DNA from: Octopus sinensis
Lineage: Eukaryota
Direction of reading: 5' to 3'
Assembly (NCBI RefSeq): GCF_006345805.1
Contig: NC_042999.1
Coordinates: 134,850,001 to 134,914,000 of the forward strand
Length of the DNA stretch: 64,000 nt
The notes beneath the pieces are model-generated. The model searched no databases. It had not been told where the DNA came from and saw only the letters and a list, made by a program, of their open reading frames with translations. Of the stretch, positions 1-63,585 are shown one piece after another; position 1 is the stretch's first letter; every line of letters starts with the position of its first letter. Made by a program: the position numbers and the translations under genes.

Positions 1-350
1 ATCATAATAAACTCATAAAATTTCTTCTGAGTTTTTAATTATCTTACATGGAAGTGGCGAAAGTGATAAAAAGAATTTGGAATTAAATAAAAATATTGCC
101 TTCTGATTTCTAATCACTCATTTCGGAAATTACCCAAACAAGTTAATCAGGATTGAAGCGATAAAATATTTAGTTATTATAAACATCTGATCGACGTATT
201 ATGTCCTGTCTATATCGTTGATACAAGACAATATTTGTATGTAGTGAAAGCATTAAACCTAAGAAAATTGTGTAATATTGGATTAAGTGTGCTAAATATT
301 TGTTTTTGTCCCTCAAAATCAAAATTCTAAACCTGCCAAAATTGGTATCT
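1..350 (+). repeat. Diverged paralogous copy of the polyA/3' flank that follows the 10-Cys exon at 21357-21550 (matches ~21850-22215)
   Basis: ATCATAATAAACTCATAAAATTTCTTCTGAG (1-31) matches ATCACAATAAATTCATAAAATTTCTTTTGAA (~21850). TTTCGGAAATTAC, AAAATATTTAGTT and GATATTTGTAT blocks are collinear. AATAAA at 6-11 and 21855-21860. Confidence 0.8.
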
Positions 351-380
351 TATTTTTGTACTTGATAAAATAACGGTTTC

Positions 381-594
381 AAATTTTGGCACAAGGCCAG
401 CAATTTTAGAGGTGGCGGCAAGACGATTACATCGACTTCCCCAGTGTTGAACTGGTATTTATTTCATCGGCCCCGAAAAGTTGATGTAAGACAAAGTCAT
501 CTGCGGCGGAATATGAACTCAGAACGTAAGGCCAGACGAAATGCCGTGAAGCATTTAGTCCGGCGTGCTAACGATTCTGCCTGCTCGCCGCCTT
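381..594 (-). mobile_element. tRNA-derived SINE with Deu/Nin-type core
   Basis: Reverse strand has a GGCGGCGAGC..GCAGAATCGTTAGCACGCCGG head, a GAGTTCA B-box and a TTTCGGGG.CGAT..AATA...TACCAGTT core. Many copies in the window. Confidence 0.8.
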
Positions 595-612
595 CTTACA
601 TTATCAAATAAT

Positions 613-840
613 TCTTTCTATATTAGGCACAAGGCCTGAAATTTTGAGGTGGGTGGGGATGGGGTGGTTAAGTCGATAAGATTGACCCCAGTACTCAACT
701 GTTACTAAATTTATCAACCCCGAAAGGACCCCGAAAGGCAAAGATGACCTCAGCGGAATTCAAACTCAGAATGTAAAGACGGACGAAATGCCGCGAAGCA
801 TTTTGTCCGGCGTGCTAACGATTCGGCCAGCTCACCGCTT
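613..840 (-). mobile_element. Deu/Nin-type SINE with 20-bp target-site duplication
   Basis: Same family as 381-594. Flanked by TTCTTACATTATCAAATAAT at 593-612 and at 840-855 + 1250-1253, the right copy being split by a Helitron. Confidence 0.8.
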
Positions 841-855
841 TCTTACATTATCAAA

Positions 856-1249
856 TCTTTATATTTTTATATATAAAAGTGAGGTTGTGTGCTGTCTGTC
901 TCCTACGATTTAGATTCATAACTACTCCCACATTTTGCAGTGCAGTTTAACCAAAACCGGGTATCTTATAGTCGTGATTCATGTCGAGCCCTTCTGGGTA
1001 TTAGCGCGCGTCTACGATGAGTAAAAAAATTTACCATCAATTTTTCCCATTTTTAATGCAGTTTTGGCATATATAAGGGAAGTAACTCTCTAAAAATGTA
1101 TTATTAAATCTCAGAACGTAAAAAGCTACAGTAACACTCTCCCCTTTGTGGTTAGCCATATTGAGATGGCTATTATACTTTACATCTCTAAAAATGCTTA
1201 TATAGTTATTTCCCTTACAAATCCGAGCAACGCCGGGCGATACTGCTAG
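856..1249 (+). mobile_element. Non-autonomous Helitron
   Basis: 5' TC, 3' GC-rich hairpin CCGAGCAACGCCGG followed by CTAG, inserted between A and T. Near-identical copy at 2555-2952. Confidence 0.8.
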
Positions 1250-1399
1250 TAATAACATGAAATAATAAACTAGGATCACCTACATGACTTACCTTACATT
1301 TTCGCGTTACAGATATAGAGAGACAGGGGAGAGAGAAAATTATCTAGAAAAACAGACAAACAGACAAACAGACAGACAAGCGGAGAGCAAATAGAATGT

Positions 1400-1755
1400 C
1401 ATGCGATATTTCTTCCGACTCTTTACGTTCTGGATTCAGTCACGTTGAGTTTGATTTTGTCCTCCATCGTTTCAAGGTAGATAAAATAAGAACAAGTCAA
1501 GTACTGGGGTCGATGCAGTCGACTAACCCTCTCCCTCTAAAATTGCTGGCCTTGTGTCAAAATTTGAAGCAATTAAAGGCGGTGAGCAGGTAAAAATCAT
1601 TAGAGCATCGAACCAAATGCTTAGTGGCATTTCTTCCGGCTCTTTACGTTTTAAGTTCAAATATCACCCAGATTATCTTTGCCTTTCATCCTTAAAATAT
1701 AATCGACTAACCACTCCCTCTAAACTCACTTGCATTGTGCCAAAATGTGAAACCT
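1400..1755 (+). mobile_element. Two tandem degraded Deu/Nin-type SINE copies
   Basis: CTGGGGTCGATG..TCGACT and AAATTGCTGGCCTTGTG motifs, then a second head AAGGCGGTGAGC at ~1575. Confidence 0.65.
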
Positions 1756-1783
1756 AGATAGATAGATATATAGATAGATAGAT

Positions 1784-2040
1784 AAGTTTCTTTATTGGCC
1801 ACACAGGGCTGCACACAGATGGGACAAGTTACAAGGTAGAGCTTTTCTTTTGGGGGATGAAAAAAACAAAAGAAAAAAAAAGGGGTGGCGTAGGTTTTCG
1901 ATCAAGAGGGATCGTAAAAGGGAAGAAAAGAACAAAAAAAATAAATAAATAAATAAATAAATAAAATAAAAAATAAAAAGAATAAAAAGAAGAAAAAAAA
2001 GAAAAGGAAAAGGAACAAAAGAAAAGAGAAATGAAAAAGA
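1784..2040 (-). mobile_element. Retroelement 3' fragment embedded in a (TAGA)n microsatellite
   Basis: Reverse strand ends GTGCAGCCCTGTGTGGCCAATAAAGAAACTT followed by (ATCT)n. (TAGA)n lies on both sides (1755-1783 and 2041-2134). Confidence 0.5.
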
Positions 2041-2136
<96 letters not shown>

Positions 2137-2468
2137 GCAGGCAGATAGGGAGAGAGTTTAATTCAGTCAGATAATGTCATTAAGCTCAACATTCAAAGTT
2201 TCCACGTGTAAATGTAACATGCGTTGTTAGTCAACCATGATGCAGCTAAGATTGTTGAAAATAAAAACAAAAAAGAGAAGATATTTCAACAGATGGACGC
2301 ATACTTTTTATTTGCTTGCACGATAATGTTTTGATACCGTGTGACTTTTAATCACTGATCAACGAAATGCAAACACTTTGTAAGGTTTGGTGAGGCAAGG
2401 GGGAAAAAATTAAGGAGTCTGAGATAAAAGATATAATCTGATGTCAGCATACATATTCACGTTTACGA

Positions 2469-2554
<86 letters not shown>

Positions 2555-7270: not shown

Positions 7271-11763
<4,493 letters not shown>

Positions 11764-11781
11764 TATTATAATATATATATA

Positions 11782-11814
<33 letters not shown>

Positions 11815-11815
<1 letters not shown>

Positions 11816-12420
11816 CGCGAGAAAGAAGCAACAAGAATGGATAGGTTTTTAGTATAATCGTTTCATACAAGGACAGGCTTTATTAAAAGTTGCAAAAATT
11901 GCAGCATATAAACGTGTCCCGTACTCATCAGCTAAAATACATGTGAGTTCTCTAGACATCCTAGTGGTTGAGGCTATACTCATGAAGTAATGTAGATAAT
12001 TAAGTAACATAAATAGATTTCCAAAGTTCATTAAAGTTCTTTAAAGATGATGTACAATCTTATCACAGAATTTTAAAAAAGTTTTAATAGCATCACAGAG
12101 AAGGTGACCTAATCCATAGTGTACATATGAATTTCCAGAGATATGAGGAGGGATTACATACTCACAGACGACAAATTTATCCATTGCTAATCACAACGAG
12201 GTGGGTCTCAATTCCTGCTTATTAGCATTACAGAGAGGGTGAATTAATCCTTTGTATAGATGCACAATTTCCAATGGTGTAGATGTAAATTTCCAGAGAA
12301 ATGAAGAGGAATTTCATATTCACAGGCGATAAATTTATCAATGGTTGAACACAATGAGGTAGGTATCAATTCTTGCTATATGATTAGGTATTTGCCACAT
12401 TAATCACATTACTGCTATTT
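11815..12420 (-). mobile_element. Penelope-like pLTR remnant with hammerhead motif (11849-11935) and ~160-bp internal direct repeat
   Basis: Reverse strand TTAG-CTGATGA-GTACGGGACA..TGTCCTTGTAT-GAAACGATTATA-CTAA. Same terminal sequence family (AAGCAACAAGAATGGAT) as 55718-58066. Confidence 0.65.
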
Positions 12421-14255: not shown

Positions 14256-14727
14256 TTAGCCGTGGTTGGTCAGGCAACTAGCAATGGTTTCGCACCTACA
14301 AGGCTCCGAGGGGTGTAGGTGACATGTCAGACTTGATAGCCGCGGGCACATTCCTTCGCTTCAACTGAAGATTGGAAAAATAGTGTTCGCCAGCCAGAGT
14401 TGTGAAAAACACAAAACAAAAACAATCCCGAGACAAAATTCTAACGAGCGACAACCTTTCGGAGTGAGGTGGAGTTATTTCCCTTCGACCGGCTTCAGTT
14501 GTGCCTCTTGAAACTAGTGAGCACATACACGCTTTTCGTTCTCTTTTCGGCAAACGGAGAATTTTATGTTCCCAACACAAATATCCTCTGATGAAGGCGG
14601 AATTCCCCGTTTGCCGACTATTCTCCAACATTCTATATATTTTCAACATTTGTTTACACTCCCAGGGCTTTAAATTTTAATATTTCTACTATTCTTGATG
14701 TTATATATTTTATATCTAATATTTTGG
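13926..14727 (+). repeat. Third, partial and more diverged copy of the 2.3-kb unit, cut off where the CR1 LINE begins
   Basis: Starts GGACCAACTTACACAGAG and is collinear with 7271-8168. Stops at ATCTAATATTTTGG (14727). Confidence 0.9.
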
Positions 14728-14902
14728 CTTCTTCACCCTTAATCTGCAATACCTTGTGAATTCTATTTCAAAATTTCATTTCGACATGTATTTTTCTCTT
14801 AACAACTACTCTTTTAAATGACTTCGTTCACTTCCGACTACATGGAATATCAGTTTCTGCTTTTACGGTTTTGAACAACAAAAACAGAAACTTAAACCCC
14901 CT

Positions 14903-15658
14903 ATGTCTTCCTCCCCTATTGCTCTTGGACAACAAAAATTAATCATTCCAGCTGAAGTACATCAACAGGTACAAAAACCAACCATGCCCTCCTCTCCTGA
15001 TGCTTCCCAACTAAAACAGAGATCGACCATCAGCACAGAAGTTGCAGAAATTAGACGAATGATTTCCGCTTTGAGTCGTGAAGTAGCAGGACTCAGAACC
15101 AGTGTCTGTCCAAAAACTCGCAGCGAAGGGTCATATAGGAGTGCCCTGCTCAGCAACTTACCTGTAGCTCGTACAGAACCTCAACGCATCGAGGGAGTTG
15201 CTGCGCCGGCCACTCATGAATTAATAGCCATCGGAGTGCCGGAAGATGTGGCAGATCTGCAGGCATTCATTGGAAACACAGCTAGGGATCTCAGCTGTGT
15301 CCCTCCAAAAAGTGCTTCCCGCCTTGGCCGACCGGGATCCAAACCCAGGCTGATCAGACTGTTGTTTACGGGCTCTACTGAGGCGCGGACATTCCATCTG
15401 GCTGCTGACAGAGCTCGGCGTGACAACATTATCAACTTTAGAACGCGTCCTGGCCTACCACCCGATGTACGCCCAAAGATAAGATCCGTGGCTTCCCTAA
15501 ATCGCAACTCTGTGCCACGGGAGAGTTTTAGCCTCCGCGATGATGGGCAGATCTGGAAATTCGTCAAGTCTGGTGAGTCGTGGATAAGGGATGCCAGTTG
15601 GACTGAACAGACTACACCCACAACAACAACTGGCAATGCAAAAATCTTGGGAAACTAA
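14903..15658 (+). CDS. CR1 LINE ORF1 (251 aa)
   Basis: Open frame directly upstream of ORF2. Contains a coiled-coil-like segment and an RLG..KPRLIRLLF motif typical of LINE ORF1. Confidence 0.75.
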   Translation: MSSSPIALGQQKLIIPAEVHQQVQKPTMPSSPDASQLKQRSTISTEVAEIRRMISALSREVAGLRTSVCPKTRSEGSYRSALLSNLPVARTEPQRIEGVAAPATHELIAIGVPEDVADLQAFIGNTARDLSCVPPKSASRLGRPGSKPRLIRLLFTGSTEARTFHLAADRARRDNIINFRTRPGLPPDVRPKIRSVASLNRNSVPRESFSLRDDGQIWKFVKSGESWIRDASWTEQTTPTTTTGNAKILGN

Positions 15659-18469
15659 CCAAGAACAATCAGCCATCCCCTGTATATCATCATCTGAAAT
15701 CCAGATATAAACTGCTGTCCTTGAATGCCCGTAGTTTATGCAACAAGGTGCATCTTTTTGTCTCCTACGTCAAAAGTATCAACCCAGATTTCATCACAGT
15801 CACGGAAACGTGGGCACACTCTGCACTCTGTGATGGAGTTTTCAGCATAGCCGGCTACAACCTGTTCCGCAAAGACCGCATTAATCGCCGTGGAGGGGGT
15901 GTGATGATTTATGTTCGATCAAGTCTATCGGCAATCCCCTGTGATGATTTGAACCAATCTCAGCAGGAGGTATTTTTCTGCAATGTACACATGACCATGT
16001 CAACACTTCTGCTCGGAGTCGTTTACCGTCCTCCAAATTATCGCCAAGATGCACAGCTTTTTGATATCCTCAGGGCGGCTGCCATGAAAACATCCACATA
16101 TGTTGCGGGGGACTTCAATTTCCCTGAGATTGACTGGGAGGCCTTCCGTTGGCCGCAAAGTGCAGACGATTTCCTTGAACTGGTGCTGAATTCGAATTGG
16201 TCCCAAGTTGTTACCTCCCCCACAAGGGGTAACAACACTTTGGATCTGCTACTTACCGCTTCTCCTGAAACAATCATTAGTGTCGCTACCGAAGAACCTT
16301 TGGGTGACTCTGATCATTCCATGATCATGGCCGACTTGTCTCTGATTGGTTGTAACAAAAAACACAACCATCTTCAGACTGCCCGCTTTGACTGGAATAA
16401 AGCAAACTGGAGCTCTTATTGTACTGAGCTGCAACGCCCAAACTGGCGCGAATTTTATGCCTCTGGAGATGTGGACACTATACTCCAGAACATTCTGAAT
16501 TCAATATGGGCAGCATGTGCAGCATCAGTACTACGCAAGCACAAAAAACCACCCAATAGTGCAATTTGGGAGACTGCAGCAGTCCGACTTGCCAGGAAAG
16601 AACGCCGTAATGCTGAACGGGAATACAAGTTGCACAAATCAGAGAGCAACAGGAAAAAGCGCAATAGGTCAGCCAACCACCTCAAGCAGGTGACAAAAAA
16701 GGCAGTGCTTGAATTTGAACAACGCATTGCAGCTAACCCTGACAGCAAAGGGTTCTGGAAGTATGTGCACTCAAAGCAGAGACCCCCACTCTCCTGTTGG
16801 TCCCCTTCGCAATCCCCACACAGGACAGATTACTGGCAATCCCGAAGAATGTGCAGAAATCATTGCTGGATGCTATGCCGGCATCTTTACTGTCGAAGAC
16901 CAAAATGTTCCATCATCATCACCACTGACATCGGACTCTATATCTTCTATGCAATTTACACCAACAATGCTGCAACGCCACCTAAAGAATAAACGCAATT
17001 ATGCCTCTCCTGGTCTCGATGGTGTTACAGACCTACTTCTCAAACGCGGTGGGTACTTTCTTCTAGGCCAACTTTCTCTATTCTTCCAATTCTGTCTTGA
17101 CAGTGGTGTTACTCCAGAACAGTGGAAAACTGCCAGTGTCATCCCTCTGTTCAAAAAAGGCGACCGCACATCGCCAGTCAACTATCGCCCCGTCAGTCTT
17201 ACTAGCTGCATCGCCAAACTGATGGAATCCTGTATCAGAGAAACCCTCTGGAACTTCTGGAAGTCTCACAGCCTCATCCAGCCGTCACAATTCGGATTTA
17301 TTCCTAACTCCAGCTGCTGTAATCAACTCATCGAGTTTCTTGAGGACGTTACCCAAATCACTGATCGCGGATCCTGGGTGGATGTTGTTTACCTGGACTT
17401 TGCTAAGGCTTTTAACTCTGTGCCACACAAAAGACTTATGGTGAAGCTTTCTGCGATGGGTGTAAGAGACGAAGTCTATAACTGGTTAAAGTCCTTTATT
17501 TTCGGCCGAAAAGAGGTTGTCACAGTTCTAGGACAGCACTCTTCGCCCTATGAGATGACATCTGGTGTGCCGCAGGGATCTGTTCTTGGCCCCCTTTTAT
17601 TTGTTGCATATGTTAATGACATAGATGCCAACTTAAAGAATTCCACAGTGCTGAAATATGCAGATGACATCAAGCTGTACCTCGAAATAAAGAGGTCAAA
17701 TCCTGTACACTATGGATCTCTATTGCAAGCAGACATGGACACAATGCAGCAGTGGATCATGGACTGGCAACTCAAGATGGCTGTGGACAAATGTACCACC
17801 ATGCATTTTGGGAGGAGAAACCCAGCGTCCACCTACTCCCTCCACAACACTAGTCTCAAAAAGTCTTCAAGTGAACGTGACCTGGGTGTTATTGTCGACA
17901 GTGATTTGCGTTGGACAAAACACATCGCTAAAATTGTCAAGAAGGCTGAGGGTGTCTTGGCATCACTCATCAAATCCTTTATGAGCCGCTCTCCGGCTAT
18001 CTATCTGCGGCTTTATATAGCTATGGTAAGACCTCACCTGGAATTTGCGTCACCGGTCTGGAACCCCTATCTTGTCCAGGACATCAATCGTCTGGAAGCT
18101 GTTCAGCGACGTACAACCAAAAGAATACCCTCCATCAGGCATTTGCCATATCCTGAACGCCTTACTTCCCTGAGCATGGACACATTGAAACTCCGACGTC
18201 TGGCAGCTGACTTGGCAGACACCCATAAAATTATCAACCATCGCACAAACAATAACTCTGAGCACCTCTTCAAACTCCACCCATCTAACACCCGTGGACA
18301 TATTTACAAAGTAAGAAAACAGCACAGCTCCCATGACTTCAGGAAACATTTTTTCACGCTGAGAGTTGCTGAAGCGTGGAACAAACTGCCGGCATCGGTT
18401 GTTAGTTGTCGGAGCACTGCATCCTTCAAAACTTCCATGCTTCCTGAGATTCGCCAACACTACACTTGA
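15649..18469 (+). CDS. CR1 LINE ORF2 (APE endonuclease + reverse transcriptase), no upstream ATG, one +1 frameshift at the C5 run 16783-16787
   Basis: Frame open from 15607 and first ATG only at 15904, inside the APE domain. Removing one C from 16783-16787 joins the 423-aa and 586-aa ORFs (KQRP-HSPVGPL). Confidence 0.9.
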
Positions 18470-20795: not shown

Positions 20796-21356
20796 TGATA
20801 CACTTTTATTGGTTAATGAATGACATGAAAATCATTTTCGCTATAAATCAATACATAAAGAGTTATTAGCAATTAAAGTTTGAAACTTTTGGTAATTTTA
20901 ACCAGTCGTTAGCCACAGAAACAGTCATGCCTGTTTCCATAGTAACAGGCAGAACATTAGAACTCTTTTGTCTGCAAGAAAGCATGTGTTGACAAATACA
21001 TTGAAACCGCCTGTTTTATTTATCTGATTACAACTAAGCATGTAAATTTATGTAGCGCAGGAGATATAAAAATTGTAATTTGTTCGAGAAATTGATTGAA
21101 TGCATTTCTAACTTTATCATTTATACTGCTTGTAAATATTAGCATGTGCACATGTAGGCATGTAAAGGTAACTATTTAATTTACGTACTCACCTATAATC
21201 GCCCACTGTTGGTAGGTTTGTTAAACCACTTGTGTCATGCAGCTCACAACCCGTCGAACAGGCAACAAGACATTTTACTCTGTAATGAATCAAAAATACT
21301 ACAGATATGTTACTAAGTTTGTCTTTTCTCCTAATGTTTTTACTTCTCTATTGCAG

Positions 21357-21550
21357 AATGCTACATCAACCAAAATTGTGCCATTGCCAAAGGATGTGAC
21401 TGTATATCGATGGACAAACAGCCTTGCTTACAAAAGTGTTCCCATTACGCTTTGTGTATATATGGCACTTATACAGTGACTTCTTGTGGCTACGGTAGAA
21501 GGTTTGAGCCGAGTTTAAGAAGATGCATCCCTGGACGTTGTCAATATTAA
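21357..21550 (+). CDS. Isolated terminal exon encoding a 10-Cys peritrophin-A/ChtBD2-like module, paralog of gene A exon 5
   Basis: Pyrimidine tract + TTGCAG acceptor, phase 1. Reads CYINQNCAIAKGCDCISMDKQPCLQKCSHYALCIYGTYTVTSCGYGRRFEPSLRRCIPGRCQY*. Cys spacing is identical to 46432-46631. AATAAA at 21855. Confidence 0.85.
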
Positions 21551-22937
21551 ATGTAAGGCTACTGACAATCTCATTTAGCAATGTTCCCAATGAAACTACA
21601 GAAGTCGAATTTTCCTCTATGATTAATTTTTGCATGGTAATGTTTGGCGCAGGACGTTCCCCAACAGCATTATATGGGTTCATATATAGCTGAATAGACG
21701 GAAGGATGGATGATGGTGTAGAAGACGGGATTCAGTTTGTAGCTTTCAACAGAAGCCCATTGAAGAGGTTTCTGATTTGGTTAACATTTTCCAATTATTT
21801 ATTTATCACAATAACCTTTTTTTATGAAAAATCCTATTTTTTTTAAAAAATCACAATAAATTCATAAAATTTCTTTTGAATCTTTTATTTTCTTACACGG
21901 AAGTTACGAAAATGGTGAAAGCTATTTATAATTAAGGTGAGGGTAATCTATATAATTTTTTTTAAATTCTAATTACCTTATAGTATACATCGCCCATTTC
22001 GGAAATTACTAAGCTGATCAGGATTAAAGGGACAAAATATTTAGTTGTTATAAACATATGATCGATGTATCATGATCTGTCCATTTCATTGATAAAGTTC
22101 GATATTTGTATGCAATGAAGACAATAACCTAAAAGCATTAAAGGATTAAATGTATTGAAGAATTTTTGTGCCTTAATATCAAAGTTCCAAACGCGCTAGA
22201 ATTGATAACCATTTTTTTCTCTCTATTTTCGAAGATGGTAAAATATGAGTCAATAATATTTGTACTTAATGAAAACATTTCGACATAGTAAAGCAGCATC
22301 GATACGAATAGGAGGGAGAGAAAGCTAAATACAGTCAGTTGAGTAAAAAGATGATGATGTAAGAAAATGAGGTGCTGGAGTTAATTGATACTGAAGTAAA
22401 TTAACAAAAAGTTACATATATTTTGAGAGGGATATAGTCGATTGAGTCGTAACTGATAAATGATTTTACAACAAATCCTTTAGCTCGGCTTTCTACAATT
22501 TCTGCTTTCAACGCTGAGCCCAAATTCTCCCATGGAAATGTAGAATGTATCCATTTTAGTTTATTATCCTTTGAAACATCATATGTCAAGGTTGAAAATT
22601 TCATATTCTGCTACTAACTCATCTTCATATTCTGCCTATAACAAAGGGAAGAGGTTTGTTTTTAACCAATCAAATCTAAAGACAATGTTATAAAAAAAAA
22701 ATTTAATAAAAAAAAGAGAATTAGCAAATTTTCTTACTTGCAACTTGTCACGGAAGGCTCAGAAGTTCTCATCAAAATATTGCTATAGTGCTAATAATAG
22801 AGTACATGAATATTCTAGTATATTATAATACGATGGTTATATATTAATATACAAGCATATGAGTGTCGTCAAAAATGCCGTCAGTCAACACAATGGCGAA
22901 ACGATTGACGAATGTCAACAATATAGTAAATATATGT

Positions 22938-24264: not shown

Positions 24265-25440
24265 TACGAGGGGCGTTCAATAAGTAATGCCCCTGACCCA
24301 CTTCCCATATCAGTAGAGCAACGAAACTTGGCACAGTTATTAGTCTTTTTCTACATAGAAACCACCCAGAGTTACGCATTTCTCCCATCGTTTGATGCAG
24401 CTCTGGAAACCGTTTTTGTAGAAGACCCCAGCTTGGTCCTCCAACCACGACGTGACTTCAGAAATCAAGGCTGCATCATCTGGGAAACGCTTTCCTTTCA
24501 AAAACAACTTCATGGCTGGGAAGAGGTGAAAATCAGTGGCTGCAAAGGTTGGGAGAGTAGGGGGGTGGGGGAGGAGGTCATAGCCGCACGCCTGTGCTTC
24601 TGATCTGGCAACACGCGAGTTGTGGACCGGAGCGTTGTCCTGCAGGAGGAGGATGCCTTTGCTGATCTTGCCCCGCCTCTTGATTTTGATAGCTTCTCTT
24701 AATTTCCCCAAAAGTGAAGCATAATAGGCTCCTGTAATTGTGGTACCCTTTGCCAGGAAATCTGTCATCACTACTCCGTCCTGGTCCCTGAAGACTGTGA
24801 GCATGACCTTGCCCGGAGGGCTGCACCCTTGCCTTCGTTGGAGGAGGTGAGTCACGGTGCTTCCAATGCATTGACTGGGCTTTGGTCTCTGGATTATAGT
24901 GATGGACCCAGGTTTCATCCTGTGTAATCAGTCTTTTGAAAAATTTTGACACATCTTCTTGGCACATCTCCAAATTCATCCTCGAGCACTCGACGCGTTC
25001 TTGCTTCTGGAAAGGTGTGAGCAACCTGGGAATCCATCTGGCAAACACCTTTTGCATATGCAAATGGTCATGAATGATAGTTTCCACAGACCCGGTACTA
25101 ATCTTGACCTCATGGGCTATTTGGCGAATAATTATGCGTCGATCTTCCAAAACGGCAGCCTCCACTTGACGGACAGATGCCTCATCAATGGCAGAAGGGG
25201 GGCGACCAGATCTGGGAGCTGTTTCCACAGAGTTCCGACCATGTTTGAATTCACGATGCCAACGTTTTACAAGGTCATATGATGGGGCATCATCACCATA
25301 AGTTACTTTCATTTCATCAAAAGTCTCCCGTGCTGTGCGTCCTTTCAAATACAAAAACTGGATCACTGCTCGACACTCAACAGGCTCCGTTTCACACTTG
25401 ACTCATTCACCATGATAGATCGCTAGCTACTACACATTCT
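24265..25440 (-). mobile_element. Mariner transposon (D,D34D), frameshifted, one TIR retained
   Basis: TA-CGAGGGGCGTTCAATAAG TIR. Motifs WIPRLLT, ITQDETW, LQDNAPVH and HPP..TDFHLF. Frameshift near 24815. Confidence 0.92.
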
Positions 25441-27354: not shown

Positions 27355-28472
27355 TAGTTAGGCCATTTTTTCCGGAACGTTGAACACAACATGGACAAAA
27401 AGCAAATTCGCACAATTTTCTTATTCCAGTTCAAGCTAGGCCGAAAAGCTGCTGAAACAGCTCGCGATATCAACGATGCATTTGGCCCATGAACTACTAA
27501 TGAACATACAGCACAATGGTGGTTCAAGAAATTTCGTAGCGGTGACGAGAGTCTTGAAGATGATAAGTGTAGTGGTCGGCCATCGGATGTTGACAACGAT
27601 CAACTAAGAGCCTTAGTGGAAGTCAATCCACGCACAACTGTTCGAGAGCTTGCTTCTGAATTAGACGTAACGTTTACGACAATTCCCAACCACTTGAAAG
27701 AGATTGGGAAAACAAAAATACTTGAGAAATAGGTGCTGCATGAATTGAATGACAACCCCCCCCGCCAAAAAAACCCGCCGTTTTGAAGTGTCGTCTTCCC
27801 TTTTACGCAACAAGAACGACCGGATTGTGACTTGTGATGAAAAGTGGATTCTTTACGACAACCGGTGACGTTCAGCTCAGTGGCTGGACGCCGACGAGGC
27901 TCCTTGGCACTTCCCAAAGCCAAAGTTACACCAAAAGAAGGTCATGTTAACTGTTTGGTGGACTGCGGCCGGTCTCATCCATCACAGCTTTTTGAATCCA
28001 GGCGAAACCATTACGGCGGAGAAGTACTGTCAGCAAATGGATGAAATGCATAAGAAACAACAGCCAGCTCTGGTCAATAGAAAAGGACCAATTCTTCTCC
28101 ACGACAATGCTCGGCCGCACGTCGCACAACTCACCCTGCAGAAGTTGAACGAATTGGGATACGAAACTCTGCCTCATCTGCTATACTCACCAAACTTCTC
28201 ACCTACCGACTATCACTTTTTCAAGCATCTCGGCAACTTCCTGCGTGAGAAATGCTTCAAAAACCAAAACGATGCCAAGCACGCCTTCAACGACTTCATC
28301 GCCACCAGAACGCAGGATTTTTACGCTACTGGCAAAAATGAAGTTGTTTCGCGTTGGCAGTGTGTTGATTCTGATGGTGTTTATTTCAATTAATAAAGTT
28401 TTGTTTGAGTCGAGATATGTGCATCTGAATTTAAAGGTTAAAAACTGCAAGAACTTTCTTGACAACCTAATA
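27355..28472 (+). mobile_element. Hsmar1-like (cecropia-type) mariner, decayed; ATG 27391, stop 28393, right TIR 28443-28470 + TA
   Basis: MDKKQIRTIFLFQFKLGRKAAETARDINDAFG, SGRPSDVDNDQLRA, LLHDNARPH and YSPNFSPTDYHFFKHL. Right end ACAACCTAATA. Confidence 0.92.
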
Positions 28473-32743: not shown

Positions 32744-33204
32744 GATGGGCTACAGCAAATATTCTGCTCAATACCACAGATTTGCTTGTCAGTTGTTTGA
32801 CCTTAACCAGTTGAGCATGTCCCTTAGTGGCTGACGATATGTGCATCTCTGATCACGAGCAGAAGTAGTGGGGGAGCATCATGGCCATGTGTTGAGAGGG
32901 ATTCTTTGAAGTTTGAATGGTTCACCTCTGGAAACATAGGTGTTTCGTTCAACATCCTAAAGCAACCCTTATTCAGGGACCGTTTGAGCAGGATGGGCTA
33001 CTCAACCTGAAGAAAATTCTAACTGGGCCCCACCTGCAAGGTCATGTGCTGTTTATCTTGATATGAGATCACCATGTCGCGCACATATGGTTGTGATGCA
33101 TGTGCCTGGTGTACCTTTATCAGACGGGTAGTCATGATGGGTATATTGGGCTTCGTATATTTTACCCCAGTGTCACTTTGATGGCATGAACTGCTCTCTC
33201 ACTC
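32741..33204 (+). mobile_element. ~460-bp non-autonomous element bounded by (AAT)n tracts, partial inverted copy at ~48420-48645
   Basis: Flanked by (AAT)n at 32671-32740 and 33205-33372. GCAAATATTCTGCTCAATACCACAGATTTGCTTGTCAGTTG and GCATCTCTGATCACGAGCAG recur reverse-complemented near 48.5 kb. Confidence 0.65.
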
Positions 33205-33226
33205 AATAATAATAATAGTAATAATA

Positions 33227-33289
<63 letters not shown>

Positions 33290-33304
33290 GTAATAGTAAT
33301 AATA

Positions 33305-33371
<67 letters not shown>

Positions 33372-33372
33372 G

Positions 33373-34572
33373 CTACTTCAGAAGAAAGGAAAACTAATAC
33401 AAATAGCGGCAAAACACGAGCAAAACAAAAAACTGTTCTCAGTATTTAAGGAAGCTGACAAATACTAACAAGAAATCAGACCACCTAATAAATATGAAGA
33501 AGAAGAAGAAGAAGAAGAAGAAGAAGAAGAAGAAGAAGAAGAAGAAGAAGAAGAAGAAGAAGAAGAAGAAGAAGAAGAAGAAGAAGAAGAAGAAGAAGAA
33601 GAAGAAGAAGAAGAAGAAGAAGAAGAAGAAGAAGAAGAAGAAACAACAAAAGCTATAAAACAAATGAAATCCAAACTAAAAATAGAACAGCAACGAACCA
33701 TGATAAAACGATGGCAAGAAAAGCCCCTTCATGGTAAATACTGGACTAAACTAAACGCAAAAGAAATAGACAAAGAAAAATCCCAGCAATGGTTGAGAAG
33801 CTCAGGACTCAAAGCAGAGACAGAGGGATTTTTAATTGCAGCACAAGACCAAAGCCTCCCCACCAGAAATTACCAAAAACATGTAATGAAAAGAAATATA
33901 ACAAGTAACTGCAGAATATGTGGAGATGGACAAGAAACAATAAATCGTATTATCTCTGGCTGCCCAGTCCTGGCTAAGAAGGAATATATTCACAGACATG
34001 ACAGAGTTGGAACCTACATACACTGGAAGCTATGCCAACATTATGAAATAACAACAGAAAAAAGATGGTATAGGCACACACCAGAAAAGGTCACAGAAAA
34101 CGAGAAAGCAACCATACTCTGGGATATGCCGATACACACAGATAGAGAAATTAAGGCCAACAGACCAGATATAGTTGTCAGAGATCATGAAGAAAAAAAA
34201 TGCTTTCTAATTGATGTATCAATACCGGCAGATGACAACGTGTCTCTAAAAGAAATGGAGAAACTTTCAAAATACAAGGACCTGGAAATAGAGGTAACCA
34301 GAATGTGGAATCTAAAAACAGAAACAATTCCTATCATAGTAGGTGCATTAGGCATGATAAAAAATATTCAGACAAATACATAACGAAAACACCAGGACTT
34401 ACAAACACATATAACATACAGAAAATTGCACTACTAGGCACTGCACACATCCTACGCAGAACACTTTCCATACAATAACCATCAGAGCATCACAACAAAT
34501 CACAGCACATACCTAAGGCACACAGAGCTGTGCTCGGTAGTGAAGTGAAAGCTCGCTATAAAAATAAAACTA

Positions 34573-41029: not shown

Positions 41030-41362
41030 ATGAAGTACTTGGTGTTTATTCTAATGTCGCTAGTTGTTTGTGTGGAATGCTACAAATTTTCAGCTGAAAT
41101 TGCAAAATGCTTTGGCGATTATTCAAAGAATATGTTTGATCCGGACAAAAAGATATCTTCATATAAATATTGTATGGATAAAATTTTATTTAATAACCCC
41201 CGTTTAGATACATGGAGTGACTATTTTCCAGACATAAATAATTTTAAAAGAGGAAGTAACAATTCTATGATGGTCAGGGGAATTAGAAAAGAATATAGAA
41301 TGCTCACTCTCGTAGAAAGAGACAATTTTCATCGCGCCATTAATATGTTGAAACAAGATACG
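41030..41362 (+). CDS. Gene A coding exon (exon 2): signal peptide, N-terminal region and RKEYRMLT motif
   Basis: TTTACAG acceptor at 41020 and ACG|GTAAGT donor. Homologous to 63241-63585. Confidence 0.9.
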
Positions 41363-42612
41363 GTAAGTTTTCATATAGAAAATTTGTTCATATCATTTAA
41401 TTCTTTTTCTTCTTTTAACAGGTCATTAACAGATACGTCTTTATTCGATATCAGTTAATTACTAAATTTAATGAACAACTTTTACTGTACTTTGTTACAA
41501 AACGTCAGCAAATTAGTTAATTCTTACACATATACACGTAAAATTCGAGGGTGTATGATGTTCATGGTTTGTCCCAGTGGTGTTGTAAACCAAAGTAAAG
41601 TGAAACATTTATAATAAGTAGCAATTAATTATAAAGTTTAAACCTTAAACGGTAAATATCATCAATTGATGTTTCATTAGAGAACATCAGACATTAACTG
41701 ATGTTTCAAAAATTTTACATAGATACGGCCGCTACCAAATGAAAGTGAACATTTTACGGAACTTTTCAATAATGAAATTGTAAATTTTATTGTGTGCGAG
41801 TCTAACAATTGTTATAATTGTTGTATTTGTTTAAGTGAAAATAAGCCTAAAAATTGCCCTCAAGAAAATTAGCTATTTTTGTCTTTTTTCTCCTCATTTG
41901 GCACACATATTCATGCAAGTTTTTCCACTGTTTAAGAGTTAATTACATTATCGTTGTTACAATAGACGATCTTATAGATTATTAAGCATGTACGTATATA
42001 TGTATGCATGTATGTATGTATGTATGTATGTATGTATGTATGTATGTATGTATGTATGTATGTATGTATGTATGTATGTATGTATGTATGTATGTATGTA
42101 TGTATGCATGCATGCATGCATGTATGTATGTATGTATGTATGTATGTATGTATGTATGTATGCAACGTTATGCTAACTAATGATGTCCACTGTTCTTTTT
42201 ATTTAGAGTATGACTCCAAATAAATACGATGCGATCGCCTTCCTCCATACTGGTCACACGGTTAGAAACGCTCACTCTGGCCCTTCTTTTCTAGTTTGGC
42301 ACAGAATGTACCTTAACATGTAAGTATTTTCTCTTAGATATGAGATTTATTATTTTCGACATTTTTCTACTTTTCTTTCTACTCTAATTTCCTAACAGTA
42401 TTTAATGCGATACTTTACTAATAAATCTTTCATAATTCCTGCAAGACAAGTATAAGTAATACACATGTAATATTAATAGATCTGACTGAATTGAACTGCA
42501 TTTGGAGGCAAGTTACATGAGTTTATTAGTCAGATTTGTACTTAATTGAATATACATGTATCCACAGGTGTGTGCGTGAGCGAGAGAGAGAGAGAGTGTG
42601 TGTGTGTGTGTG

Positions 42613-42644
<32 letters not shown>

Positions 42645-45600
42645 AGCTTTGTTAACATATGCTCGTATATAGGTACATAAGAGCATTTGTATGTGAGTAC
42701 TGCATCTTTGATATTCCGGTTACTCATCAATGACTGTTCGCTATTATTTCAACAAGTGGTTTGAATGTTATTGTTCCCTACATTCTAATTTATCTTCTGC
42801 TGAATAAGCCATTCTAATTTGAATACCGACAATGTTACTCATATATGTAGTACAAAACTCTGGTGGTCACTTACTAAATAATCATGTTCGTTATTTCTTT
42901 ATATTTGACAATTTATTTCAGTGATATCATAGAAATGTTTTACTGTTTTCCTCAATGCTATCATAAGATGTGTTTGTGAAGAAAGTTGAGCTGAAATAAG
43001 GACTTCTAATAAAGAAGATTCGGTAATTTGACACGCACAGAATATTCAGTACATATTACAAAAAAGAATAGAAATTTAATGTATTGCTGATATGATTTAA
43101 GGCATTTCATTACTGATATTAGAAACACACCGATATTCTATTCCGCAAAATACTTATCATCATCACCGTCGTCGTAGTCGTTGTCCTCGTAGTTATCAGC
43201 ATCATCATCATCATCTTCGCTTTATTTATAGCATCATTTTTCTTTTTTTTTTCATTTCCTCAGGATGGAAGACGCTCTTAATGAAAAGGTGTCAGGAGTA
43301 ACAATTCCATATTGGGATCCAACACTTGACAGCTCTCTTGATGATCCTCGAGATTCCATTATCTGGACGGATAAATTCTTGGGAAATATTAATGGAATTG
43401 TTAATTGTGGTCCGTTTGCTAACTGGAGCACACCAGCTGGGCCTCTGATAAGGAATGGTGGTTTTATTAGTAACTTACCAACTACTCGCGACATAAGAAA
43501 TATTCTGAGCCGATGGAGACTTGCAGATATCAGCGAACCAAATGCGATTGGTAAATACAACTTGGAATTTCACCACAATTCTATGCACAATTTTATTGGA
43601 GGACATTTAGGTCAACCAGAAACCTCTCCCATGGATCCAGTTTTCTGGCTAATCCACAGCTATATGGATCTTCTTATGAATCGTTTCAATGAGAACCAAA
43701 AGAAGCACAATGTCGATCCTGCAACAGATTATCCATTAAATTATGGTTTACCAGTTTATGCTCTCGATCACAGTATTGGACTGAAAAATATAACAATCAG
43801 AGAAGCATTAAAACAAACTCAATCTTACAGTTACATTTCTTCATATGACTACGCTATACTTGAGATGCCATGTAACGGAAATCCAGCGGTCCAAGTTTCT
43901 CCTTATCTAACTTGCCACAATGGAAGATATCAGACGAAAACTAGAAAATCAGCTGGTTGCAATGCTCTTATTCCCTATCAGAATATGTTTTGTATTAACC
44001 GTAATTGTGATCTAAAAGAATGGGCATTTATTCCAGTTGAAGTAATTTACGAACGACCTTTCGAAACGATGAAATTTGGAAATTTCCCGATCAGAAATGG
44101 CATACCAGATTTACTGACTGATCTATACGACAATAATGTACCCCAAAATATCTCATCTAGTAACTCTACTTGCCGAAGTAAAAAGTGTTGTGGTCCCGCG
44201 GAAAGAGTCAGTGTGCAAGCCAGTGGCATTAATTATTTTGGTAACTATGAAGAAATGGTGATAGTTGATCGTAGATTAGCTGTATCATCGGATATAGCCT
44301 ACATTGGTATCAGAAGACCTACAACAAACTTCAGTCTGGTATTTACGACAGTTTCAGAACAATGTGGAAGAATATGTCGTCCTTCCTGCTTAGTGCCGGG
44401 TTCAAATCCACCGAAGTACACAGAATGTATAGGTCTGTTGAACTTAACTCACAATGATGCTCATTTCTACGGCAATACTCTGGCAGAAGCTTACATGAAA
44501 GTGTGGGATTATAAAAACCAGATACGACCGAAAGTAAGACACGAGAATATACCAATCGTATACCATTGTGATGACAGCCTGTGGCCATTTAACAACACCG
44601 ACTATACAACAACAACACCATCATCTTCGACAACAGCGTCAACACATACACAAACCACAACTACTACCCCTACCACTACTACAACTCCAACAACTACAAC
44701 ACCAACAACTACAACACCAACAACTACAACACCAACAACAACAAGTTGGGTATGGAGAACATCTACAACACCAACAACAACTAGTGGAAACAGTAATGTC
44801 TGTAAGTATTTCATTTATCCACTCCTTTACTAAACCCATGTCTTTGTGTGGGTTATATTGTAAAAAGCAAAAGTACCTATAATTTATTACTAGATCAATA
44901 GCGTCACTTATTTTTTTACTCTCAACAAGAGATCATGTCTATTCCCATTATCCTTCCGAATATTTTGCATAAATAATTTTTATATACAAGTTGTTGAGAG
45001 ACAGAGGCGGTGGAGGGACGGGTTATCTCTACTTGTTATCTTTACTTCCTGAATGTATCTTTTTTTCTGAATTCAAATTCCATTCAGATCAATTTTGGGT
45101 TTCATCGTTCAGGTGCCGATAAAATAAGACCTGTGTCCTGTGTGTAAAGTTTAATTTATAAGTTTATGTCACTGAAAAGAAGTGTTAAGCCAAACTAAAT
45201 ACTAAATAGTGTAATTTTTTTTTTTTAATCAGAAGTCAGATAACTACGGTTCACTCCACATATACATGATATTGTACCAGTATCTGAAATTGATATGCAA
45301 CTAACATACATAATCATAACTATGATGTATCATAAAAACAAAAAGAAGCGAAAAAAAACTTTGTATTTTGTTGCATACATTTCTAATCATAGCCTTATTA
45401 AATTCTAATTTGCAACATCCCAATAGTCTTTTGTATAAAATTCTTCTAATTGGTTTCAAGCAGCTCAACCTTCTCTTTCTTGGTATGTATATTATTATTG
45501 TCCACAAGATAATTCCGCCGTGGTCGACTTTGCCTTTAATCTTTATGAAGTCGACGGAATAATTACCATTGAAGCACTGGGGTCGATGTTACCACTTACA

Positions 45601-46631
45601 CAATTTCTCCTTCTACACAATTTAAAGCCTTGTGCCTATAGTAGAAACGATCATTATTCACGAGCTACCTATAATGAATATATATATATATATATATAGT
45701 AAAAAAGAACTTCGTTGAAGCGATTATCCCCGCGTGTTAAGTTATAACGCAAAAATATATAATAAAAGAAGGAAGCTGCACACAGTTCACATATATTTTA
45801 AATAGTAGAGTATTGTGATAGTCAACCGGTTTGGTGTTTCGCTAATTATGGCATTATTAAACTATGTGCATTTTTCTTCGTTTATTATATATATTAATAC
45901 TTTATGTGACCGTTGCAATCTGGTTCATTCGAGAATCTTGCACTATGGATTATGAAACTATAATAATCCAAAGTGTGAAACGTCGTTTACTTCTTTAGGA
46001 ATTCATTTCGAAATAAAGTAATTTGAGATTTTGACACAAGGCCAGCAATTTCGGGGGAGTGGATAAGTCGATTACATCGACCCCGGTGTTCCAATGATAT
46101 TTATTTTATCGAAAAGAAATAAATATTTAAATCACCTCGAAAGGATAAAAGGCAAAGTCGACCTCGACATAATTTGAACTCTGAAAGTATAGACGGACGA
46201 AATGCTGCTAAGCAGTTCATCCGTCTTTCTAACTGTTCTATCATAAACCTTTTCATTTGTATTAAGAACAACCAAATGTACTACCCAACTCTAACTTTTT
46301 TTGTTTGTGCCTTGCGTTGACTTCATGATATTTCTTTACAATATACGTAATAAATTCCTGAAAAAATACCATACTAGATATAACGTGACTAATTTTACTC
46401 TCTCTTTCTCTCTTTTTTTCTCTCTTTCTAGTCTGCAAAGTTGATGATTCCTGTATAGTCCCATCGGGATGTAGTTGTAAATTCTTCGAAAAACAACCTT
46501 GTCTGCAAATGTGCTCCAAATATGCTGTATGTTTCAGAGGTTATTATCATGTTTTGCCATGTGGTTATGGTTTTAAATACGACCAACGTCAGCAAAGATG
46601 CGTCCGTGGATACTGCGTACACAGAGGGTAA
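41030..46631 (+). CDS. Gene A: secreted tyrosinase-like protein with Cys-rich CTD, Thr-rich linker and C-terminal ChtBD2-like module; join(41030..41362,42207..42319,43264..44801,46432..46631), 727 aa
   Basis: All introns are GT-AG with compatible phases (0, 2, 1) and the 2184-nt frame is uninterrupted. Signal peptide present. CuA His in FLH, AHSG, WHR. CuB His in HNSMH and WLIH. PYWD motif present. Confidence 0.92.
42207..42319 (+). CDS. Gene A exon 3: CuA site
   Basis: TTTAG|AGT and AT|GTAAGT junctions. Reads SMTPNKYDAIAFLHTGHTVRNAHSGPSFLVWHRMYLN. Too short for the ORF track. Confidence 0.92.
43264..44801 (+). CDS. Gene A exon 4: CuB site, Cys-rich C-terminal domain, Thr/Pro linker
   Basis: CTCAG|G acceptor. 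Contains MEDAL..IPYWD and LEFHHNSMHNFIGG..DPVFWLIH. T|GTAAGT donor. Confidence 0.93.
44604..44786 (+). repeat. Coding Thr/Pro mucin-like repeat (15-nt CCAACAACTACAACA units, PTTTT)
   Basis: In frame within exon 4 of gene A. Confidence 0.85.
46030..46235 (-). mobile_element. Deu/Nin-type SINE in gene A intron 4, with an oppositely oriented fragment at ~45510-45635
   Basis: AAGGCAAAGTCGACCTCG and GATTACATCGACCCC family motifs. Confidence 0.7.
46432..46631 (+). CDS. Gene A terminal exon: 10-Cys peritrophin-A/ChtBD2-like module
   Basis: Long pyrimidine tract + CTAG acceptor, phase 1. Reads FCKVDDSCIVPSGCSCKFFEKQPCLQMCSKYAVCFRGYYHVLPCGYGFKYDQRQQRCVRGYCVHRG*. Confidence 0.88.
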
Positions 46632-63240: not shown

Positions 63241-63585
63241 ATGAGGTATTTAATCTTGATTCTAACGCTGACCGTGACCGTTGTTTGTGCAGATGATTTT
63301 AACATAATAAAATCATTCACAAAATGTTACAAGAATTTCCAAAACAATGCTTTTGAATCGAACAAGAGGCAGGAGTGGCAGAAATACTGTTTGGATAACA
63401 ACCCTTATGTTCGGAAACGTTTTGGAGGTTGGGTTAACCAAATTCCAAACATTCATGACTATAATAATATGGGAGATGGTCCAAAGCCTATTAGGTCAAA
63501 GCAGGTCAGAAAGGAATATAGAATGCTCACTACAAAAGAGAGAAACGATTTCCATCACGCCATTAATCTATTAAAACAAGATACG
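63241..63585 (+). CDS. Gene B first coding exon (exon 2), secreted tyrosinase-like paralog; gene continues beyond the window
   Basis: TTTGCAG acceptor at 63231, signal peptide MRYLILILTLTVTVVCA, VRKEYRMLTTKERNDFHHAINLLKQDT, and an ACG|GTAAGT donor at the same position as gene A. Confidence 0.9.

What the first reader, a model, noticed from the sequence alone, without database searches (positions are those of the whole stretch)
21357..21550. Intact orphan copy of the chitin-binding-like terminal exon with no tyrosinase body nearby
Seen: a strong phase-1 acceptor, an open frame with all 10 Cys, about 27 of 62 residues identical to gene A exon 5, a stop codon and a downstream AATAAA. I found no exon 1-4 equivalents in the preceding 21 kb, which is nearly all transposon DNA, yet a paralogous polyA region sits at 1-350. 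Inference, two options. It may be an alternative last exon that lets an upstream tyrosinase swap binding modules across a >21-kb intron. Or it is the surviving tail of a paralog whose body was deleted; by analogy with gene A that body would lie where the TSD-less CR1 and the R4 remnant now are.
Basis: partly seen in the sequence, partly recalled or inferred. Interest (0 to 1): 0.75.

Follow-up and report, generated by a model that had tools for sequence, protein, structure and literature searches.

The report
Duplicated alternative last exon of octopus tyrosinase
The 'orphan' exon is a real, intact, duplicated last exon of the octopus tyrosinase gene tyr-1, whose body lies just beyond the left edge of the window. 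NCBI's predicted isoform X2 of Octopus sinensis tyr-1 already ends in it, so it is an ordinary feature, not a mystery.

Summary
Window 21357-21550 (+) has a clean phase-1 acceptor, a 63-codon open frame with 10 Cys, a TAA stop and AATAAA at 21855-21860. No tyrosinase body lies in 1-21356.

The exon is not an orphan. Its translation is identical to the last 63 residues of XP_036357239.1, Octopus sinensis tyr-1 isoform X2. Isoforms X1, X3 and X4 end in a sister exon that is 87% identical. Comparison with O. vulgaris puts window base 1 about 390 bp 3' of that sister exon. The tyr-1 body is therefore just off the window, and the X2 intron is about 23.5 kb.

The copy is a DNA duplicate of about 1 kb (21185-22216) that includes intron sequence. 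It is older than the O. bimaculoides / O. sinensis split.
- Flank identity is 62-75%, against 85-98% in the exon.
- dN/dS is about 0.2.
- A gene-conversion tract covers the acceptor and the first 70 nt of the exon.

An O. bimaculoides model joins a D-type exon to its own exon-3 tail, so the copy probably began as the tail of a paralog. The domain is a divergent CBM14 (peritrophin-A) module. Splicing itself rests on the RefSeq model and was not tested here. Low interest.

The parts
21185..21356 (+). Retained 3' end of the duplicated last intron: polypyrimidine tract and AG acceptor (21355-21356)
   Evidence: Homologous to the end of the last intron of tyr-1 in O. bimaculoides (L003 16397-16538) and O. 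vulgaris (L004 16749-16828). The last 47 nt are identical to O. vulgaris P. No homology upstream of about 21185.
21357..21550 (+). Distal terminal exon 'D' (phase 1; 2 nt + 63 codons + TAA). Encodes a 10-Cys CBM14-like module and is the C-terminus of O. sinensis tyr-1 isoform X2.
   Evidence: Translation. 100% identical to P0007 residues 648-710. Pfam CBM_14 20.8 bits. AF2 and Foldseek results. dN/dS 0.19-0.24.
21310..21427 (+). Gene-conversion tract shared with the proximal exon (acceptor region plus first 71 nt of the exon)
   Evidence: 1 difference in 118 nt to O. vulgaris P. O. bimaculoides P differs from both at about 12 sites. The site pattern D=POv, not POb, is clustered here only.
21551..21860 (+). 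3' UTR of D, up to and including the AATAAA signal at 21855-21860
   Evidence: Aligns to the 3' UTR of the proximal copy at 62-75% identity. The AATAAA is conserved with window 6-11.
21861..22216 (+). Downstream part of the duplicated block, past the polyA signal
   Evidence: Aligns to window 12-357 and to L004 up to 17768. Homology ends at about 22216.
1..357 (+). 3' flank of the proximal terminal exon 'P' of tyr-1 (AATAAA at 6-11). The exon itself lies about 390 bp left of the window.
   Evidence: 99% identical to L004 17412-19915 and 35630-38122, which start 390 bp after each O. vulgaris tyr-1 stop codon. 84.8% identical to L003 17155-17547.
14822..18466 (+). Non-LTR retrotransposon (LINE) inside the X2 intron
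   Evidence: Pfam Exo_endo_phos 1.5e-12 and RVT_1 6.3e-37 on ORFs 15607-16989 and 16694-18466.
46432..46631 (+).
   Evidence: tblastn. Sequence and acceptor.

Best explanation
Window 21357-21550 is the distal member (D) of a pair of duplicated terminal exons of the secreted type-3 copper tyrosinase gene tyr-1. The species is Octopus sinensis or a very close relative.

Layout. The tyr-1 body (exons 1-3) and the proximal terminal exon (P) lie immediately left of the window. D lies about 21.9 kb downstream of P.

Origin. D sits in a DNA-level duplicate of about 1 kb: about 170 bp of intron, the exon, the 3' UTR with its AATAAA, and about 360 bp beyond. The duplication is older than the O. bimaculoides / O. 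sinensis split. It most likely began as the tail of a whole or partial tyr-1 paralog whose body is no longer present here (inferred).

Use. According to RefSeq model X2, transcripts that skip P and its polyA site run on for about 21 kb. They splice the same phase-1 exon-3 donor to the D acceptor, across an intron of about 23.5 kb. The product has the same enzyme and the same Thr-rich linker, but a variant CBM14-like module with 8 of 63 residues changed, including Y49F and Y52S. This is an alternative last exon created by tandem duplication.

Maintenance. D is kept intact by purifying selection (dN/dS about 0.2) and by gene conversion with P across the acceptor and the first 70 nt of the exon.

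Shown:
- identity to X2
- position of the body
- extent and relative age of the duplicate
- the selection and conversion signals
- the CBM14 fold

Inferred:
- real splicing in vivo
- origin from a full paralog
- any functional difference between the two modules
For: Identity to X2: the D translation equals the last 63 aa of P0007 (XP_036357239.1, isoform X2). X1 and X2 differ at only 8 residues, all in this exon. The O. sinensis gene on record spans 123,319 bp.

Body just off the window: O. vulgaris L004 shows 99% identity to window 1-2500, starting 390 bp after each tyr-1 stop. The exon-3 donor and P acceptor are located. The proximal intron is 1,514 nt, which gives a D intron of about 23.45 kb.

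Duplicate block: L004 16749-17768 aligns to window 21263-22216, and L003 16384-17494 to window 21174-22208. Window 1-357 aligns to 21850-22216.

Age: in the flanks, the site pattern P_Ov = P_Ob, not D, outnumbers the alternatives by about 4:1.

Constraint: exon identity is 98% and 85% in its two halves, against 62-75% in the flanks. NG86 dN/dS is 0.24 against P_Ov and 0.19 against P_Ob. The binomial test against neutrality gives P = 0.010 and 0.005.

Conversion tract: 21310-21427.

Paralog origin: P0160 (O. bimaculoides XP_014790641.1) consists of an exon-3 tail, its own linker and a terminal exon. That exon shares L24, I34, F49 and S52 with D.

Domain: CBM_14 at 20.8 bits. A profile of six octopod exons finds multi-CBM_14 proteins. 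The AF2 model has pLDDT 78.8, and the top 10 Foldseek PDB hits are all CBM14 folds.

Gene conversion in octopod tyrosinase clusters has been reported for Argonauta argo (PMC9635652).
Against: - No RNA evidence was examined here. X2 is a computational (XP_) model. My statement that Gnomon isoforms need transcript support is from general knowledge, not a test.
- The conversion tract covers the acceptor and half the exon. Part of the intactness therefore needs no selection on D.
- The dN/dS rests on only 15-17 differences.
- The exon tree is star-like. D, P_Ov and P_Ob are about equally distant (54-56 of 63), unlike the flanks, so the history is mosaic.
- The O. vulgaris annotation that I saw (P0003, P0006) uses only P-type endings.
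- I could not see the O. sinensis sequence left of the window. The position of the body is inferred from O. vulgaris at 99% identity.
- The genomic place of P0160 could not be retrieved.
Confidence: 0.72

Rival explanations
1. D is an unused relic. It is the tail of a dead tyr-1 paralog that looks intact only because gene conversion from the active P exon keeps repairing it. Isoform X2 would then be an annotation artefact or splicing noise.
For: A conversion tract covers the acceptor and the first 71 nt of the exon. The body and linker are absent from the 21 kb upstream. The O. vulgaris models use only the P-type ending. The intron would be about 23.5 kb and full of repeats.
Against: The unconverted 3' half (21428-21550) still has an open frame with all its Cys. 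It carries about 7 synonymous and 9 non-synonymous differences, where neutrality predicts a ratio near 1:4. The AATAAA is kept although the surrounding flank is 25-38% diverged. A D-type exon is also intact in O. bimaculoides (P0160). The RefSeq model uses exactly this acceptor.
Confidence: 0.2
2. D belongs to a transcript of its own. An unrecognised upstream exon within or beyond the 21 kb (for example a signal-peptide exon ending in phase 1) splices to it and gives a small secreted CBM14 peptide independent of tyrosinase.
For: O. bimaculoides has a short separate model (P0160, 163 aa, named 'salivary glue protein Sgs-3-like') that ends in a D-type exon. Region 19.2-21.2 kb is unique and uncharacterised.
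Against: P0160 starts inside tyrosinase exon 3 (MKVWDYKNQIRPK...). It looks like a truncated tyrosinase model, not a distinct gene. No candidate exon was identified. The RefSeq X2 model links D to the tyr-1 body.
Confidence: 0.07
3. D is a retrocopy, or a LINE-transduced fragment, of the tyr-1 mRNA 3' end.
For: A LINE in the same orientation lies 2.7 kb upstream.
Against: The duplicate contains about 170 bp of intron and runs about 360 bp beyond the polyA signal. It has no polyA tail at the signal. It does not abut the LINE.
Confidence: 0.02

Closest known systems
RefSeq XP_036357239.1, putative tyrosinase-like protein tyr-1 isoform X2 [Octopus sinensis] (P0007)
   Same: Its last 63 residues are identical to the translation of 21359-21547. 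The phase-1 junction K|K-C fits the AA at 21357-21358.
   Different: Nothing at the protein level. It is a predicted model whose transcript support I could not inspect.
Proximal terminal exon of tyr-1 (isoforms X1/X3/X4; O. vulgaris L004 16829-17022; O. bimaculoides L003 16539-16732)
   Same: Same length, phase, 10-Cys pattern, acceptor sequence and downstream AATAAA. 55/63 aa and about 91% nt identity.
   Different: 8 amino-acid changes (I24L, V34I, S37T, I39T, S41T, Y49F, Y52S, H63Y). Lies about 21.9 kb further downstream. Flanks are only 62-75% identical.
Alternative last exons and alternative exons created by tandem exon duplication (Kondrashov & Koonin 2001; Letunic, Copley & Bork 2002; cited from my own knowledge)
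   Same: Two homologous exons in tandem on one strand and in one phase. Each has its own polyA signal, and gene models use them alternatively.
   Different: The duplicate seems to come from a larger gene duplicate that lost its body, not from duplication of one exon. The spacing is unusually large (about 22 kb).
Tandem tyrosinase cluster with gene conversion in Argonauta argo (Yoshida et al. 2022, PMC9635652)
   Same: Octopod secreted tyrosinases in tandem with conversion tracts in the 3' part of the genes. The window also holds gene A and the start of a third gene.
   Different: That paper describes whole genes. It does not describe a body-less terminal exon used as an alternative ending.
CBM14 / peritrophin-A chitin-binding domains (Pfam PF01607; human chitotriosidase CBM14 6SO0/5HBF, tachycitin 1DQC, Blo t 12 2MFK, Aplysia EHEP 8IN3)
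   Same: Fold and core Cys pattern.
   Different: Four extra N-terminal Cys (10 in all). Scores just under Pfam's gathering cut-off. The ligand is unknown, and the best solved relative (EHEP) binds polyphenols, not chitin.

Membership tests
Exon of the O. sinensis tyr-1 gene (type-3 copper tyrosinase, PF00264) | Translation identical to part of an annotated product of that gene | tested here: met
   63/63 identity to the C-terminus of P0007 (isoform X2). The rest of X2 is identical to X1.
Exon of the O. sinensis tyr-1 gene (type-3 copper tyrosinase, PF00264) | Same strand and downstream of the gene body, with a compatible splice phase | tested here: met
   Window 1-2500 is 99% identical to the sequence that begins 390 bp 3' of the O. 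vulgaris tyr-1 stop, on the same strand. The donor site is ...CCAAAA|GTAAGT in phase 1, and the acceptor is cag|AA TGC. The body is seen in O. vulgaris, not in O. sinensis itself.
Alternative last exon by tandem duplication | Two homologous terminal exons in tandem, each with its own acceptor, stop and polyA signal | tested here: met
   P is in L004/L003 and D is in the window. The 30 nt before the acceptor are identical. Stops are TAA in both. AATAAA lies at window 6-11 and at 21855-21860.
Alternative last exon by tandem duplication | Both exons are joined to the same upstream exon in real transcripts | not testable with these tools
   Only the RefSeq models X1 and X2 are available. No RNA reads or cDNA could be searched.
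CBM14 / peritrophin-A domain (PF01607) | Score at or above Pfam's gathering cut-off (22.1 bits) | tested here: not met
   D scores 20.8 bits (E = 4e-4). Gene A's exon scores 16.2 bits.
CBM14 / peritrophin-A domain (PF01607) | Profile-level and fold-level relationship to accepted CBM14 domains | tested here: met
   The profile of six octopod exons gives 329 hits. All 8 hits that I checked are CBM_14 proteins. PDB profile hits are EHEP at 2.8e-6 and Blo t 12. The AF2 model has pLDDT 78.8, and the top 10 Foldseek hits are all CBM14 structures with TM 0.45-0.59.
CBM14 / peritrophin-A domain (PF01607) | Binds chitin | not testable with these tools
The nearest solved relative binds phlorotannin (8IN3, 8IN6).
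Processed retrocopy / LINE 3' transduction | No intron sequence; ends at the polyA site with an A tail | tested here: not met
   The block holds about 170 bp of intron and about 360 bp beyond the AATAAA.

The most novel reading that the evidence does not exclude
The two terminal exons are a regulated switch. By choosing P or D, the octopus would attach the same secreted phenol oxidase to different matrices or substrates, for example chitin versus phenolic or tanned protein. The aromatic changes Y49F and Y52S would alter the binding face of the CBM14-like module. In that case the tail of a dead paralog was recycled as a new alternative ending of its neighbour.
Probability: 0.12. Interest if true: 0.45.

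Novelty: already known. Interest (0 to 1): 0.2.

Why it matters
The practical lesson concerns the scan. An 'orphan' exon near a window edge can belong to a gene whose body starts a few hundred bases outside the window.

Biologically this is a tidy example of three things:
- the tail of a lost paralog kept and used as an alternative last exon of the neighbouring copy
- gene conversion and purifying selection acting together on a 194-nt exon
- variable CBM14-like anchoring modules on the secreted tyrosinases of octopods, enzymes implicated in tanning and in egg-case or shell-matrix formation

None of this changes current understanding, and the isoform is already in RefSeq.

Tried and rejected
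Searches and look-ups that gave nothing:
- The protein search with the 63-aa peptide alone found nothing. This was a limit of the word index, not true absence. A longer query and the cluster listing later showed identical and 87%-identical endings.
I used tblastn with full-length homologues instead.
- DNA look-ups failed for P0002, P0003, P0010 and P0160, which are not on record.
- The O. sinensis gene is on record through P0007, but at 123 kb it is too long for DNA to be returned. The sequence left of the window was therefore inferred from O. vulgaris L004.
- The 10-kb 3' flank of O. bimaculoides (L003) reaches only the equivalent of window position about 13 kb. Whether the D-type exon of P0160 is syntenic with D could not be shown.

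Ideas rejected:
- Retrocopy or LINE transduction: rejected because the block contains intron sequence.
- A hidden body in 1-21356: rejected.
- Treating the Argonauta genes P0001 and P0004 as orthologues of D: rejected. Their terminal exons are only 38-48% identical to D.

Full report
**1. The observation.**
Window 21357-21550 (+) follows a long polypyrimidine tract and ttgcag. Read in phase 1, it gives CYINQNCAIAKGCDCISMDKQPCLQKCSHYALCIYGTYTVTSCGYGRRFEPSLRRCIPGRCQY, then TAA at 21548-21550, and AATAAA follows at 21855-21860. It matches the last exon of the tyrosinase gene further along the window (gene A, 46434-46616) at 27/61 residues, E = 2e-15. All ten Cys are invariant across six octopod homologues. 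Window 1-357 is paralogous to 21850-22216: 68.5% identity over 384 columns, E = 4e-38.

**2. What else is in the window.**
tblastn with five full-length octopod tyrosinases maps gene A to four coding exons:
- 41030-41362
- about 42211-42320
- 43265 to about 44712
- 46432-46631

Gene A's CuA and CuB histidines are intact. Exon 1 of a third tyrosinase lies at 63241-63585. Nothing from a tyrosinase body lies in 1-21356, and there is no Thr-rich linker there either. A LINE with endonuclease and RT domains sits at 14822-18466.

**3. Identity of the exon.**
A search with gene A's large exon returned octopod tyrosinases. The cluster listing for two of them gave the four Octopus sinensis tyr-1 isoforms.
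- Isoform X2 (P0007, XP_036357239.1) ends in exactly the 63 residues encoded at 21359-21547.
- Isoforms X1, X3 and X4 end in a sister sequence, CYINQNCAIAKGCDCISMDKQPCIQKCSHYALCVYGSYIVSSCGYGRRYEPYLRRCIPGRCQH.
- X1 and X2 differ at 8 residues only, all in this exon.

The exon is therefore already annotated as an alternative last exon of tyr-1. The gene on record through X2 spans 123,319 bp in GCA_006345805.1. This also indicates that the window comes from O. sinensis or a near-identical genome.

**4. Where the body is.**
The O. vulgaris locus L004 (OX597816.1) holds two whole tyr-1 copies 18.2 kb apart. After each stop codon, 390 bp further on, the sequence becomes 99% identical to window 1-2500 and stays collinear to about window 11.7 kb. 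The O. bimaculoides locus L003 behaves the same way, at 85-88% identity, out to window position about 13 kb.
- The proximal terminal exon P therefore lies about 390 bp left of window base 1.
- The exon-3 donor (…A|GTAAGT) lies about 2.1 kb left of base 1.
- The P intron is 1,514 nt.
- The intron to the distal exon D is about 23.45 kb.

'No tyrosinase body nearby' is a window-edge effect.

**5. Anatomy and age of the duplicate.**
Homology between the P region and the D region runs from window 21185-21263 to 22216. It covers about 170 bp of intron, the exon, the 3' UTR with its AATAAA, and about 360 bp beyond. The block contains intron sequence and overruns the polyA signal. It is therefore a DNA-level duplicate, not a retrocopy.

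I made a three-way alignment of D, O. vulgaris P and O. bimaculoides P. In the flanks, the two P copies agree against D four to five times more often than any other pattern. Flank identity D-P is 62-75%, against 86-90% for P-P. The duplication therefore predates the split between O. bimaculoides and O. sinensis/vulgaris.

**6. Selection and conversion.**
The exon is far better kept than its flanks: 98% identity in its first 100 nt and 85% in the second.

| Comparison | dN/dS (NG86) | Synonymous differences | Non-synonymous differences | Binomial P vs neutrality |
|---|---|---|---|---|
| D vs O. vulgaris P | 0.24 | 8 | 9 | 0.010 |
| D vs O. bimaculoides P | 0.19 | 8 | 7 | 0.005 |

From 21310 to 21427, D differs from O. 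vulgaris P at one base in 118, whereas O. bimaculoides P differs from both at about 12 sites. This is a gene-conversion tract over the acceptor and the first 71 nt of the exon, formed after the split from O. bimaculoides. The remaining 3' half carries all 8 amino-acid changes and still shows an excess of synonymous change. Both processes therefore contribute. The numbers are small and the exon tree is star-like. Gene conversion among tandem octopod tyrosinases has been described in Argonauta argo (PMC9635652).

**7. Origin.**
The third protein search returned O. bimaculoides XP_014790641.1 (P0160, 163 aa). It consists of:
- the last about 35 residues of the conserved part of exon 3 (MKVWDYKNQIRPKVRHENIPIVFLCDD…)
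- a Thr-rich linker of its own
- a terminal exon that shares L24, I34, F49 and S52 (RRFEPSLRRC) with D

It is not encoded by the O. bimaculoides tyr-1 locus that I hold; identity there is only 94% and 86%. The D lineage therefore once had, and in O. bimaculoides may still have, at least part of its own body. I could not retrieve the genomic position, so synteny is unproven.

**8. The domain.**
- Pfam CBM_14 scores 20.8 bits, against a cut-off of 22.1.
- A profile of six octopod terminal exons finds 329 proteins among 1.84 billion representatives. All eight hits that I checked are multi-CBM_14 proteins.
- The PDB profile search gives Aplysia EHEP (8IN3, E = 2.8e-6) and Blo t 12.
- The AlphaFold model has pLDDT 78.8. 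Its ten best Foldseek matches are all CBM14 structures: EHEP, chitotriosidase CBM14, Blo t 12, Avr4, tachycitin and Der p 23.

The exon therefore encodes a divergent CBM14-like module with four extra Cys. EHEP binds polyphenols. For a phenol oxidase, the ligand of this module should not be assumed to be chitin.

**9. Mechanism.**
The mechanism is partly shown and partly inferred. Transcription of tyr-1 either ends at the P polyA signal (X1), or continues through about 21 kb of repeat-rich DNA. In the second case the exon-3 donor is spliced to the D acceptor, whose last 47 intron bases are identical to those of P. Cleavage then follows the AATAAA at 21855-21860 (X2). The products differ by 8 of 710 residues. 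I did not see RNA evidence; this step rests on the RefSeq model.

**10. Verdict.**
The exon is real and intact, and it is already annotated. It is an alternative last exon that arose by duplication and was very probably salvaged from a lost paralog. It is a known kind of feature and is already in a public annotation. Interest is low.

Noticed in passing
window 41030-46631 (+): Gene A is an apparently intact four-exon secreted tyrosinase, with a signal peptide, CuA and CuB histidines, a Thr/Pro-rich linker and a CBM14-like tail. No identical annotated protein came back from the 5.8-billion-protein search. The best hit is Argonauta hians at 75%, so gene A may be unannotated or annotated differently in this genome.
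   Followed up: partly
window 63241-63585 (+): Exon 1 of a third tandem tyrosinase (39% identical to the P0001 N-terminus, E = 3e-16). It runs off the right edge of the window.
   Followed up: no
L004 10001-17022 and 28217-35240 (O. vulgaris OX597816.1): Two complete tyr-1 copies lie 18.2 kb apart. The 916-aa O. vulgaris model CAI9720078.1 (P0006) fuses part of copy 1, including half of its terminal exon, to copy 2. It looks like a mis-joined gene model, or the repeat may be an assembly duplication.
   Followed up: partly
window 21310-21427: Sharp gene-conversion tract between the distal and proximal terminal exons: 1 difference in 118 nt, flanked by DNA that is 25-38% diverged.
   Followed up: yes
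terminal-exon domain (window 21359-21547; PDB 8IN3/8IN6): The closest solved relative, by both sequence and fold, is Aplysia EHEP. This is a mollusc phlorotannin-binding protein built of CBM14-like domains. The tyrosinase tail might therefore bind phenolics and not chitin.
   Followed up: no
P0160 (O. bimaculoides XP_014790641.1): This protein is named 'salivary glue protein Sgs-3-like' but is really the tail of a tyrosinase paralog: the end of exon 3, a Thr-rich linker and a CBM14-like exon. The name comes from the low-complexity linker.
   Followed up: partly
window about 7300-12100 and 14299-14676: A unit of about 2.3 kb is repeated in tandem, with a third partial copy. Identical ORFs lie at 7807-8103, 10111-10407 and 14299-14676 on the minus strand. 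The unit is also present once in the O. bimaculoides flank (L003 20699-21574, 88%).
   Followed up: no
window 24581-25402 (-) and 27869-28390 (+): mariner/Mos1-type transposase remnants (HTH_48 at 3.5e-10; Transposase_1 at 6e-26).
   Followed up: no
window 33190-34380 (+): Very long trinucleotide tracts that read as poly-Asn and poly-Glu open frames. They are probably microsatellite and not coding.
   Followed up: no
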